Below are positions 34,401 to 37,400 of a stretch of DNA of 64,000 bases, piece after piece. The DNA lies in assembly GCA_965112155.1 (NCBI GenBank), contig OZ218098.1. One strand, 5' to 3'. Source of the stretch: Podarcis liolepis (taxonomy: Eukaryota). The notes under the pieces were generated by a model. It was not told the origin of the DNA. It made no database searches and worked only from the letters and a program-made list of their open reading frames with translations. How positions within the stretch are numbered: the stretch's first letter is position 1; each line of letters starts with the position of its first letter. The position numbers and the translations under genes were made by a program.

Positions 34401-37400
34401 GATAAATGCTTTGAGACCATTTGGTGAAAATGTAGAAGACAAATTGAAACAAACCAACCTCTGGGAGCTGAATAATTTTACATGGTATTGCAGAGCTGCT
34501 CACCTAATTCTTAGAAGAAGGTGCTTACAAGAAGGAAGCATTTTAACTTTCCTTCATTTGGATTAGGGCCCATGCACTCCTAAAATTACAGTACAACCAA
34601 CTCTGCAAATAACTGCTTGCCAAATGCCACTGATCATAATCCAGGCCTCTCTCTCCCATCCTTTTCTCTGAAACCTGCAATTCAAGCAAAACTAGTGCAA
34701 TGTACACGTTGTTGAACAACTCTGACTAGGAGCACTGATATTTGGGCTCCTTTTCCAGCATGATAAGATGCTTTAAGGCTGGTGGACTTTTTTAAGCCTT
34801 AGGCACAGTTGACTAAATGATCCATTTTTACAATTATTATAATATTTATATCCTGTTTTTTCCCTAGTCAAGGAGACTTACACAGATAAAATAGAACAAG
34901 CTAAAAACACAGAAAAGACCATTATTAAAATGCAACCGAACACTAATTACAATGGGACGGTTGTAGCACTAAGTATTTGAGATTTCATATGTAGGGTGAA
35001 TGACACAAAATGAACACTTCACCATTCTGTAATTGCTCTGTTGGGTCTAGTATGCTTCTTTCTGTAGTGAGCTAGCCATTCCCAGAATGTGCAGAGTCCT
35101 AATTCCACAATGCCAAATTTGCTAATAAATTCCAATTCAATTGGGGAGTCTCCTTTTGCTTATTCGTATGCCTTAGTCTGAGTATGACAGAGCATTATTC
35201 ACCACAGAATGTTACTGAACAGTCAGACTCAGCAACTGGGATTAAGTACTGCTGTAATCAGAGGCCCAAGCAATCTTCTTGAAAAATTTACACACATTTC
35301 TCATTCACATAGCTGAAAGTGGCCAGAGGACAGAAACAAAGCCTTCAATGGCCTACTCAGTTTTCGGCACCACAATTGTGAAAAGAAAGGACACAATACA
35401 CTCTTCAGTCTTCCATTTTCTTAAAATAAAGGCTAGAATACAGTGGTACCTCGGGTTAAGTACTTAATTTGTTCTAGAGGTCTGTTCTTATCCTGAAACT
35501 GTTCTTAACCTGAAGCACCACTTTAGCTAATGGGGCCTCCTGCTGCCGCTGCGCTGCCACTGCACAATTTCTGTTCTCATCCTGAAGCTAAGTTCTTAAC
35601 CCGAGGTACTATTTCTGGGTTAGTGGAGTCTGTAACCTGAAGCGTATGTAACCTGAAGTGTATGTAACCCGAGGTACCACTGTAATGCTACTAAAATGTG
35701 TTACAATTCCGCACCTTTTCACTGTTTCTGTATTTTCCCCATTTTCTTAACATCTTCAGCCATTTGTCCACTCGTTCAATTTCCTGAAGTTTTTGCTGGA
35801 ACAGAATTTTGAAAGTGTAGTTTAGAGGGTTTATTTCCAATTTGTGTGAGCAAGAAAGGAGGGAGAGCTAGATATCCAAGCCATCAGAATATAGAGTCAT
35901 ATGGTGCATGTAAGACATTAGCTTTAAATATTTTAGCTTTAAACAGACAAGAAGGAATTTCCCCAACTGCATTCATTCCTTATGCTAGAAAGTAGAAGGT
36001 TCCAAATAAAATTTTAGCTCATATGCTACTTTAGGGGTAGAAAACCATTAGTTCTCCAGATATTACTGGACTACAACTTCCATCATCCTTGACTATTGGC
36101 CATGTTGGCTGAAAAGGATGGGAGCTGGAGTCCAACAGGATCTAGAGAAAAAATAAAAAATTCCTTCCAGTAGCACCTTAAAGACCAACTAAGTTAGTTC
36201 TTGGTATGAGCTTTCGTGTGCATGCACACTTCTTCAGATATCTGAAGAATCTGAAGAATATCTGAAGAAGTGTGCATGCACACGAAAGCTCATACCAAGA
36301 ACTAACTTAGTTGGTCTTTAAGGTGCTACTGGAAGGAATTTTTTATTTTGACTATGGCAGACCAACACGGCTACCTATCTACTACTGGAACCATGGAAGG
36401 CACCACATTGAGCCGCATGAAATGGAAGTCCATCAACCTCACCAAGAAACTTGCACAGGTACAGACTGATATCTTCTTTCTTACTAAATGCAAGAACCTG
36501 GACATTATACCCAAGGGTCTTAGAATTAAGAACCCTCTACAATCCACATATCCCACTGAATATGCAAGAAAACTATGCTGGTATCTGAAGAAGTGTGCAT
36601 GCACACGAAAGCTCATACCAAGAACTAACTTAGTTGGTCTTTAAGGTGCTACTGGAAGGAATTTTTTATTTTGACTATGGCAGACCAACACGGCTACCTA
36701 TCTACTACAGGATCTAGAGAGTTTGAGGTTAGGCACTCCTGTGCTATTCCTTTAGTATTATTATCTTGAATCTCATCCAAACTGTACAATGTATGATATG
36801 GCTTAACAAAATGCTGTACAGCTAGGTTTGCATAAACCTACTCTGAGCATGGCAAATGCTCTTTCATTCAACTGCAACAGCACATATGACCCACAAGCAA
36901 GATACTGAATGATTTGATGGATGATGGACTTGACCCTAAAAAAGACAGGAATATCACAGAGTGAGGTGCTTAGACTCCCTCAACTAGGTTTGCAGATCTA
37001 ATGACTACAGTGCCACACTTTCTCATCTCTAATTTATCCATAATGCCCAACCATCCTTCTAATTATTGCCAGCAAAATTTACAAGAATTCAGCAGCTGAC
37101 CATTCTTCCTCAGGTCAAGCTAAGCTGCTAAGCAGCCTCCCAGTTTTGCATGTGAAGTTTTGGTGCTGCATTTTAGAATCTACAGAGGAAATATAATCAA
37201 ACCTTCCTTGTGATGAAGTTCCATTATCTTCATAGCTGACTAAGGCCTAAACACAGTCATCTGGAAGTCTAATTGAAATCAGCAGGACTTGCTTCCAAGC
37301 AAGCGTGTTTATGTTGGGATGAAGAGCTATTATTATTTATCCAGAGAGCTAAGATTCTTATGTTAATAATTGCAGTGTCTTTCATCACTTGCTACTGAAA

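What the first reader, a model, noticed from the sequence alone, without database searches (positions are those of the whole stretch)
36135..36720. Three-hammerhead Penelope-like cassette in an intron of the TBC gene
Seen: a 558-bp insert bounded by a 14-bp TSD, with three identical CTGAAGA-stemII-GAAAGCTC cores (two on +, one on -). Only the 36579-36620 copy has a full 6-bp stem I, and stem III is just the palindrome AGCT. Known: Penelope-like elements carry minimal type I hammerheads in their pLTRs, and a palindromic stem III is thought to allow cleavage as a dimer. Inference: the two + copies, 323 nt apart, could pair within one transcript and release a ~323-nt monomer (retrozyme-like, possibly circular) carrying only an ORF N-terminal stub. 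The repeats are identical, so the insertion is young.
Basis: partly seen in the sequence, partly recalled or inferred. Interest (0 to 1): 0.8.

Follow-up and report, generated by a model that had tools for sequence, protein, structure and literature searches.

The report
Ordinary young Penelope-like retroelement insertion
This is a recent, dead-on-arrival insertion of a lizard Penelope-like retroelement with the textbook fold-back and partial-tandem layout and its known minimal hammerhead ribozyme motifs. I found no evidence that it makes a 323-nt self-cleaving or circular RNA.

Summary
Predicted cuts fall after C36291, C36614 and, on the minus strand, at 36208. Only the third copy has a 6-bp stem I, and helix III is just AGCU.

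The layout is the published Penelope-like element (PLE) architecture: an inverted pseudo-LTR (pLTR) copy, a partial tandem, a 36-nt "tail" at one end only, and an HHR in each pLTR. The inner 186 nt are codons 1-62 of a PLE ORF.

The retrozyme reading is not supported, for five reasons:
- The host gene (USP6NL-like, TBC domain) runs on the minus strand, so both "+" ribozymes are antisense to the pre-mRNA.
- The first "+" copy is locked in a perfect 92-bp hairpin.
- The pLTRs lack the family's upstream sequence.
- The extra 2 bp of stem I come from the junction. Family copies have 4 bp there.
- In two RNA runs of a related species the stub is about 30-fold rarer than the pLTR. Nearly all reads run into unrelated flanks, and no ends pile up at the cut sites.

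All three pLTR copies start at the same nucleotide, which is a family-wide 5'-end hot spot. Other loci join pLTRs at different break points. The junction therefore looks like a one-off template jump.

The scan had already noted many such PLE hairpins in this genome. This is a known kind of element, of low interest.

The parts
36135..36148 (.). Left copy of the 14-bp target-site duplication
   Evidence: family D4, 100% identical to 36707-36720
36150..36241 (-). Inverted pLTR (leader) copy without a tail. It ends at the T-run (RT start site 1). It carries a minimal hammerhead on the minus strand (36237-36208, stem I 3 bp). 36149 is one extra A.
   Evidence: I1, 92 nt, 100% complementary to 36258-36349
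36242..36257 (+). Central 16-nt stutter. With its neighbours it reads as three successive starts of the pLTR 5' end ((A)TCTGAAGAA repeated). This is the junction between the two converging cDNAs.
   Evidence: D3; interpretation inferred
36259..36385 (+). Direct pLTR copy 1. Hammerhead 36262-36291 (predicted cut after C36291, stem I only 3 bp). The 36-nt AC-rich tail is 36350-36385.
   Evidence: the tail is defined by comparison with the tail-less arm and with 3' ends of family copies
36393..36578 (+). Codons 1-62 of a PLE ORF (MEGTTLSR...YARKLC). Homology to PLE N-termini stops after the near-invariant Cys.
   Evidence: hits include an 881-aa protein with RVT_1 and a GIY-YIG-like C-terminus; a contig listed diverges after 36578
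36579..36580 (+). Two junction nucleotides (TG) that belong neither to the ORF nor to the family sequence upstream of the pLTR. They supply the extra 2 bp of the 6-bp stem I.
   Evidence: loose ends before 36579 and 36581
36581..36706 (+). Direct pLTR copy 2 with tail. Hammerhead 36585-36614 (predicted cut after C36614; stem I 36579-84 / 36615-20, 6 bp).
36707..36720 (.). Right copy of the target-site duplication

Best explanation
This is a single, recent, non-autonomous retrotransposition product of a high-copy lizard Penelope-like element (PLE). It is inert now.

How it was most likely made:
1. The PLE endonuclease nicked both strands 12-14 bp apart, which gives the TSD.
2. Each nick primed reverse transcription at one of the element's two internal start sites. 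The top strand started just after the T-run and produced the tail-less inverted arm. The bottom strand started about 36 nt further on, in the AC-rich tail, and produced the direct copy.
3. Each cDNA ran to the 5' end of the leader RNA, at (G)UAUCUGAAG.
4. On the direct side the enzyme then jumped, with 2 filler nucleotides, onto a second RNA at codon 62 of the ORF. It copied that RNA to the same 5' end.
5. It stuttered twice on the terminal 9-10 nt, and the two cDNAs were joined head to head.

The hammerheads are the family's standard minimal pLTR ribozyme and came along as passengers.

Shown here: the anatomy, PLE identity, motif integrity, the shared 5' boundary, host gene orientation, and the family copy-number profile. 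Inferred: two-strand priming, the template jump, and the idea that the shared boundary is an RNA 5' end.
For: - Architecture: an inverted copy adjacent to a partial tandem, a tail of 30-40 bp at one end only, and an HHR in each pLTR. This is the layout described for PLEs in PMC8557442.
- Mechanism precedent: PMC11167929 shows that an Anolis PLE protein cleaves and extends both strands. It initiates at two adjacent internal sites in an AC-rich region that delimit the tail, and it needs the first ~172 nt of the ORF in the template.
- Shared boundary: all three pLTR segments begin at the same position, TATCTGAAG (36241, 36259, 36582).
- Family hot spot: in DNA contigs of two related genomes, many family copies begin at 36579-36581 next to heterogeneous AT-rich flanks. 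Head-to-head junctions elsewhere start the direct copy 0-3 nt upstream of G36581 (tables 5c and 7).
- Other junctions: other loci join 36387 to 36581 (+TGT) and 36466 to 36581 (+9 nt). Partial tandems with different break points and filler therefore arise repeatedly.
- Copy-number profile: summed depth in X1 is 1-4 million over the pLTR, against 225K falling to 8.6K along the stub. This fits initiation mostly upstream of the ORF.
- Stub identity: the stub matches PLE ORF N-termini up to the invariant Cys.
- Youth: there are zero differences among the pLTR copies (92 + 125 aligned nt) and the TSD is perfect.
Against: - A family sharing this junction is therefore not excluded.
- The nature of the shared 5' boundary (transcription start, splice-related end or a strong RT stop) is unknown. 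RNA reads in a related species mostly continue upstream of it.
- Two-strand priming is taken by analogy from a different PLE subfamily studied in vitro.
- The target site here is not AT-rich, unlike the preference reported for the Anolis enzyme.
Confidence: 0.62

Rival explanations
1. The cassette is a member of a non-autonomous, retrozyme-like family whose 323-nt unit (leader, tail and first 62 codons) is cut out by the two '+' hammerheads acting as a dimer. The unit may be circularised and is copied in trans by PLE reverse transcriptase (rolling-circle cDNA would give pLTR-stub-pLTR).
For: Two intact same-strand minimal HHRs lie 323 nt apart with a palindromic AGCU. By analogy with the Anolis element, the unit contains the two RT start sites and the ORF-start region needed as template. 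Non-LTR retrozymes are reported to be related to PLE pLTRs. P0046, from another organism, shows four in-frame tandem repeats of a PLE N-terminal module.
Against: The host transcribes the other strand. The family's upstream sequence is absent. HHR-1 is buried in a 92-bp perfect hairpin in any transcript that includes the arm, and even in a unit-only transcript the palindromic helix II sequences pair with each other instead. RNA depth on the stub is 2-8 against 100-200 on the pLTR, 99% of RNA reads run on into unlike sequence, and no ends pile up at 36291/36614. The direct copy stops, and the junction lies, at a family-wide 5'-end hot spot. A circle has no end there.
Confidence: 0.12
2. A full-length pLTR-ORF-pLTR insertion that later lost about 2.7 kb by a DNA-level deletion between codon 62 and the downstream pLTR.
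For: Internally deleted PLE ORFs exist (for example P0014). The stub is contiguous with pLTR-1, as in a full-length element.
Against: The 3' break point coincides to the nucleotide with the 5' boundary of the other two pLTR segments and with the family hot spot. A random deletion would not do that. It would also have to remove the family's sequence upstream of helix I exactly. The zero divergence among repeats leaves little time.
Confidence: 0.05
3. The 200-bp perfect hairpin is a functional small-RNA or miRNA-like gene in the USP6NL intron.
For: Sub-threshold Rfam hits to miRNA precursor models. The hairpin is present on both strands, so it is in the host pre-mRNA.
Against: All hits are below gathering scores and spread over unrelated miRNA families and both strands, as any long perfect hairpin would give. 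The hairpin is simply two copies of a repeat present in tens of thousands of copies. It may be a Dicer or ADAR substrate as a by-product, but it is not a gene.
Confidence: 0.03

Closest known systems
Canonical EN+ Penelope-like elements, especially PAc (Poseidon of Anolis carolinensis; Frangieh et al. 2024, PMC11167929) and the general PLE insertion scheme (Craig et al. 2021, PMC8557442)
   Same: pLTRs from a partial tandem; an adjacent inverted copy; a 30-40-bp tail at one end; an HHR in the pLTR just upstream of, or overlapping, the ORF start; an AC-rich internal RT start region; a TSD; and a high copy number of short products.
   Different: Here the ORF start (36393) lies about 100 nt downstream of the HHR cut site rather than inside helix II, so this is another subfamily. 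Only 62 codons are present. The autonomous master was not recovered: the best protein hits are 67-71% identical fragments, and a full-length 881-aa relative is only 38% identical to the query in alignment A1 (45% over the stretch matched).
Minimal PLE hammerheads (Cervera & de la Pena 2014, PMC4209133)
   Same: All core nucleotides are present. There is an unpaired A between A9 and G10.1, a G10.1-C11.1 pair, a 5-6 bp helix II, a short helix I, and no helix III beyond a palindromic AGCU that can pair only in a dimer. Dual motifs 100-700 bp apart on opposite strands were described there too. The family's splice-acceptor-like sequence ends at the 5' end of helix I, as reported for D. virilis Penelope.
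   Different: Helix II is a perfect 14-nt palindrome, which favours mis-pairing between copies. Activity is untested.
Metazoan non-LTR retrozymes (Cervera & de la Pena 2020, PMC7229834; Li et al. 2026 preprint, 10.64898/2026.07.22.740005)
   Same: A non-coding unit of about 300 nt flanked by same-strand type I hammerheads, a low GC content, a TSD longer than 4 bp, and derivation from PLE pLTR sequence.
   Different: Only 1.4 units, not an array. The HHR is minimal rather than canonical. I saw no unit-length or circular RNA. There is no evidence of a family with this unit. The cassette is in an intron and antisense to the host gene.
L1 twin-priming inversions (from my own knowledge, not tested here)
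   Same: A head-to-head inverted structure created when both nicked target strands prime cDNA synthesis on the element RNA.
   Different: PLEs initiate at internal, non-homologous sites. Here both cDNAs reach the same RNA 5' end.

Membership tests
Penelope-like element insertion | Direct pseudo-LTRs from a partial tandem | tested here: met
   36259-36389 vs 36582-36712, 99-100% identical, spacing 323
Penelope-like element insertion | Inverted copy immediately upstream, forming inverted repeats | tested here: met
   36150-36241 is 100% complementary to 36258-36349
Penelope-like element insertion | Optional 30-40-bp tail at one end only | tested here: met
   36350-36385 / 36673-36706 is present in the direct copies and absent from the arm. 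Family copies end at either site (loose ends; moderate support).
Penelope-like element insertion | ORF with telomerase-like RT and GIY-YIG endonuclease | tested here: not met
   Only codons 1-62 are present at this locus. These are homologous to N-termini of proteins that carry RVT_1 and a GIY-YIG-like C-terminus. The locus is therefore a non-autonomous fragment of a PLE, not an autonomous element.
Penelope-like element insertion | Hammerhead motif in the pLTR | tested here: met
   Three descriptor hits, none in 200 shuffles
Minimal PLE hammerhead (min-HHR) | Conserved core C3-A9, G12-A14, A15.1, U16.1, H17 | tested here: met
   CUGAAGA ... GAAA-GC-UC in all three copies
Minimal PLE hammerhead (min-HHR) | [quoted passage not shown] | tested here: met
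   An extra A precedes GUGUG...CACAC (bulge = 1)
Minimal PLE hammerhead (min-HHR) | Palindromic 15.2-16.2 that allows a dimeric helix III | tested here: met
   AGCU at 36287-90 and 36610-13
Minimal PLE hammerhead (min-HHR) | Self-cleavage (as a dimer, or protein-assisted) | not testable with these tools
   RNA reads show no ends at the predicted sites. The same was reported for the Anolis element. Standard RNA-seq is a weak test.
Rfam hammerhead families | Score at or above the gathering threshold of a hammerhead covariance model | tested here: not met
   No hammerhead hit, even at E<=10 on 96 nt. The models require a helix III.
Non-LTR retrozyme | Tandem array of 150-450-bp units, each with a type I HHR | tested here: inconclusive
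   Two HHRs 323 nt apart but only 1.4 units
Non-LTR retrozyme | Abundant unit-length linear and circular RNA | tested here: inconclusive
   Not seen in two RNA runs: stub depth 2-8 vs 100-200 on the pLTR, and 99% of reads run into unlike flanks. The runs are from a related species (flank about 92% identical), not shown to carry this locus.
Non-LTR retrozyme | Multi-copy family sharing the same unit and junction | tested here: inconclusive
   No listed contig bridges 36578/36581. One contig carrying the stub diverges after 36578. Other junctions use other break points. The output was truncated and the genome itself could not be searched.

The most novel reading that the evidence does not exclude
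The cassette is a snapshot of retrozyme birth. A template jump created a 323-nt unit bracketed by same-strand hammerheads. By analogy with the Anolis PLE, that unit happens to contain everything the reverse transcriptase needs in cis: the leader, both internal start sites and the ORF-start binding region. If transcribed on the plus strand it could be processed, circularised and amplified as a new non-LTR retrozyme family carrying a PLE coding stub.
Probability: 0.1. Interest if true: 0.55.

Novelty: new member of a known kind. Interest (0 to 1): 0.2.

Why it matters
Mostly as a clean, datable example. It shows at single-nucleotide resolution the features that the 2024 in vitro work on a Penelope-like element predicts: two internal start sites, an optional tail and priming on both strands. 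It adds one observation worth a genome-wide look. cDNA 5' ends cluster at a splice-acceptor/initiator-like site exactly at the 5' end of hammerhead helix I. It does not open a new question, because PLE hammerheads, their dimeric mode and the PLE-retrozyme link are already published.

Tried and rejected
- Rfam at gathering score and at E<=10 gave no hammerhead hit. The miRNA-model hits were rejected as hairpin artefacts.
- blastn of the unit against the window found no other copy.
- Pfam on the 98-aa ORF and the word-based protein search found nothing. The full HMMER search was needed to identify the stub.
- Several multi-stretch hits in that search (P0003, P0007, P0026, P0028, P0068) are repeat translations and were discarded.
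- Exact-pattern scans for the hammerhead in metagenome, prokaryotic-genome and viral contig collections found nothing, as expected for lizard DNA.
- A thermodynamic cofold does not recover the helix-III dimer. It prefers pairing of the palindromic helix II between copies. This is not evidence against activity, because helix III dimers depend on tertiary structure.
- I considered dating by an empty site. This fits an empty site, but the letters were not shown, so it is not claimed.

Full report
OBSERVATION

- A 14-bp direct repeat, ACAGGATCTAGAGA, lies at 36135-48 and 36707-20. It brackets a 558-bp insert.
- Inside the insert, 36150-36241 is a perfect reverse complement of 36258-36349.
- 36259-36389 recurs at 36582-36712, 323 nt further on.
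- My own minimal-hammerhead descriptor finds exactly three sites in the whole window on both strands, and none in 200 dinucleotide shuffles.
- The sites are + 36262-36291, + 36585-36614 and - 36237-36208. Each has a 5-bp helix II, a 4-nt loop and one bulged A. Their stem I lengths are 3, 6 and 3 bp.
- Rfam's hammerhead models give nothing at gathering score or at E<=10 on 661 nt or 96 nt. That is expected, because the motif has no helix III.
- The sub-threshold miRNA-model hits are what any long perfect hairpin gives.

WHAT IT IS

The reading frame that continues through the inner segment has no Pfam match and no word-search relative. A full HMMER scan finds 71 relatives.
- Aligned, they share the N-terminal block from the Met at 36393 to a near-invariant Cys at 36576-78.
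- Relatives then continue into a long ORF. One 881-aa relative carries RVT_1 and, in the alignment, a GIY-YIG-like C-terminus.
- The window's frame instead runs straight into the next pLTR.
- The inner 186 nt are therefore codons 1-62 of a Penelope-like element (PLE) ORF.

The overall layout is the published PLE insertion scheme (PMC8557442). It has a partial tandem forming pseudo-LTRs, an adjacent inverted copy, a 30-40-bp tail at one end only, and a hammerhead in each pLTR. Here the tail is 36350-36385. It is present in both direct copies and absent from the inverted arm.

The hammerhead meets every sequence criterion of the minimal PLE hammerheads (PMC4209133):
- an intact core;
- a G10.1-C11.1 pair;
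- a short helix I;
- a palindromic AGCU in place of helix III.

HOST CONTEXT

The insert is indeed intronic in a TBC-domain gene, but that gene is on the minus strand.
- Exon pieces match USP6 N-terminal-like protein: residues 27-53 at about 38.48-38.56 kb, residues 66-95 at about 35.71-35.80 kb, and residues 96-129 at about 32.58-32.68 kb.
- Two further minus-strand pieces hit Pfam RabGAP-TBC.
- The two "+" hammerheads are therefore antisense to the pre-mRNA.
- Only the arm copy is sense. It has a 3-bp stem I and sits in the hairpin.

FAMILY AND RNA EVIDENCE (runs chosen)

Two contig sets from related organisms (X1, X8) and two raw RNA-seq runs (X23, X24) were laid on 36050-36800. X23 and X24 come from the same organism as X8.
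- Copy number: summed depth over the pLTR is 1-4 million in X1, against about 53 on the single-copy right flank. Along the stub it falls from 225K to 8.6K. The pLTR leader is therefore present in tens of thousands of copies and the ORF start in far fewer. This fits reverse transcription that mostly starts upstream of the ORF.
- Upstream sequence: the family's usual sequence before G36581 is ...CTTCTGTTTCAGT, not the stub. Family copies therefore have a 4-bp helix I (GUAU/AUAC). The 6-bp stem of the third copy is an accident of the junction nucleotides 36579-80.
- 5' boundary: many copies instead begin at 36579-81 next to heterogeneous AT-rich flanks. In head-to-head junctions elsewhere the direct copy starts 0-3 nt upstream of G36581.
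- Other junctions: other loci join 36387 to 36581 (with TGT) and 36466 to 36581 (with 9 filler nt). Partial tandems with other break points therefore arise repeatedly.
- RNA: the stub has depth 2-8 against 100-200 on the pLTR. About 99% of laid reads run on into unlike sequence. No read ends pile up at 36291/92 or 36614/15. The authors of the Anolis study also found no such ends.
- Caveat: these RNA runs are from an organism whose orthologous flank is only about 92% identical to the window. They test the family, not this locus.

FOLDING

- In a plus-strand transcript of the whole insert, HHR-1 is completely paired to the inverted arm (MFE -247 kcal/mol). HHR-2 forms helices I and II locally.
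- In a transcript limited to 36258-36706, the two 14-nt palindromic helix II sequences pair with each other rather than forming two hammerheads.
- Nearest-neighbour folding cannot judge a 4-bp helix III dimer, so this shows a competing structure, not inactivity.

MECHANISM

The in vitro study of an Anolis PLE (PMC11167929) reports three relevant properties.
- The protein cleaves and extends both target strands.
- It initiates at two adjacent internal sites in an AC-rich region, and the interval between them is the tail.
- It needs the first ~172 nt of the ORF in the template.

This locus maps onto that picture.
- The arm starts at the first site, after the T-run.
- The direct copy starts at the second site, at the end of the AC-rich tail. 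There is 2 nt of possible microhomology (AC) to the target.
- All three pLTR segments end at the same nucleotide (36241, 36259, 36582), which is the family's 5'-end hot spot.
- The centre holds two abortive repeats of the first 9-10 nt.

My reading is two-strand target-primed reverse transcription. On the direct side there was one template jump from the RNA 5' end to codon 62 of a second RNA, with two filler nucleotides. A later DNA deletion is unlikely, because its break point would have to coincide with that hot spot.

A heritable pLTR-stub family, or rolling-circle copying of a 323-nt circle, is not excluded. Neither alternative explains why the cDNA ends where the junction lies.

AGE

The pLTR copies show no difference over 92 + 125 aligned positions, and the TSD is perfect. 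This fits an empty site in those organisms but is not proven.

COMPARISON AND VERDICT

All of the following are published:
- PLE hammerheads and their dimeric mode;
- opposed hammerhead pairs 100-700 bp apart;
- tandem and inverted PLE structures;
- the idea that animal retrozymes derive from PLE pLTRs.

Earlier notes of this scan list many similar PLE hairpins in the same genome. Another agent calls the genome a wall lizard, which I did not check.

The finding is a correct and careful observation of an ordinary, young PLE insertion. The specific retrozyme or circle inference is not supported.

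Noticed in passing
window 36309 and 36320 (pLTR): A>G in 40-55% of RNA reads of one orientation in X23/X24, but under 0.3% of DNA depth in X8. RNA runs also show more A>G and T>C sites than the DNA runs. This could be one highly expressed variant copy or A-to-I editing of pLTR hairpins.
   Followed up: no
family sequence just upstream of window 36581 (loose ends): Family copies read ...CTTCTGTTTCAG|TGTATCTGAAG. This is a splice-acceptor-like and initiator-like (TCAGTG) site exactly at the 5' end of hammerhead helix I. 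That is where the D. virilis Penelope intron is reported to end, and where cDNA 5' ends cluster.
   Followed up: partly
protein P0046 (sequence): A 706-aa predicted protein made of four in-frame tandem repeats of a ~131-aa PLE N-terminal module. Multimeric 'ORF-start' partial tandems therefore exist in some other organism. Its DNA could not be fetched.
   Followed up: no
window 36050-36127: The left flank is itself a high-copy SINE-like repeat (summed depth 80-200K in X1). The PLE inserted at its edge.
   Followed up: no
window 17800-19512 (-), 25639-26118 (-), 28486-28623 (-), 32576-32677 (-), 35712-35801 (-), 38481-38564 (-): Exons of a USP6NL-like TBC RabGAP gene on the minus strand, including a 571-codon open stretch likely to be the large last exon (no Pfam domain).
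   Followed up: partly
window 36270-36283, 36593-36606, 36216-36229: Helix II of this family's hammerhead is a perfect 14-nt palindrome. Two copies pair through helix II in predicted folds (-42.4 kcal/mol for the dimer against -25.4 for two monomers). This could compete with, or regulate, the active helix-III dimer.
   Followed up: partly
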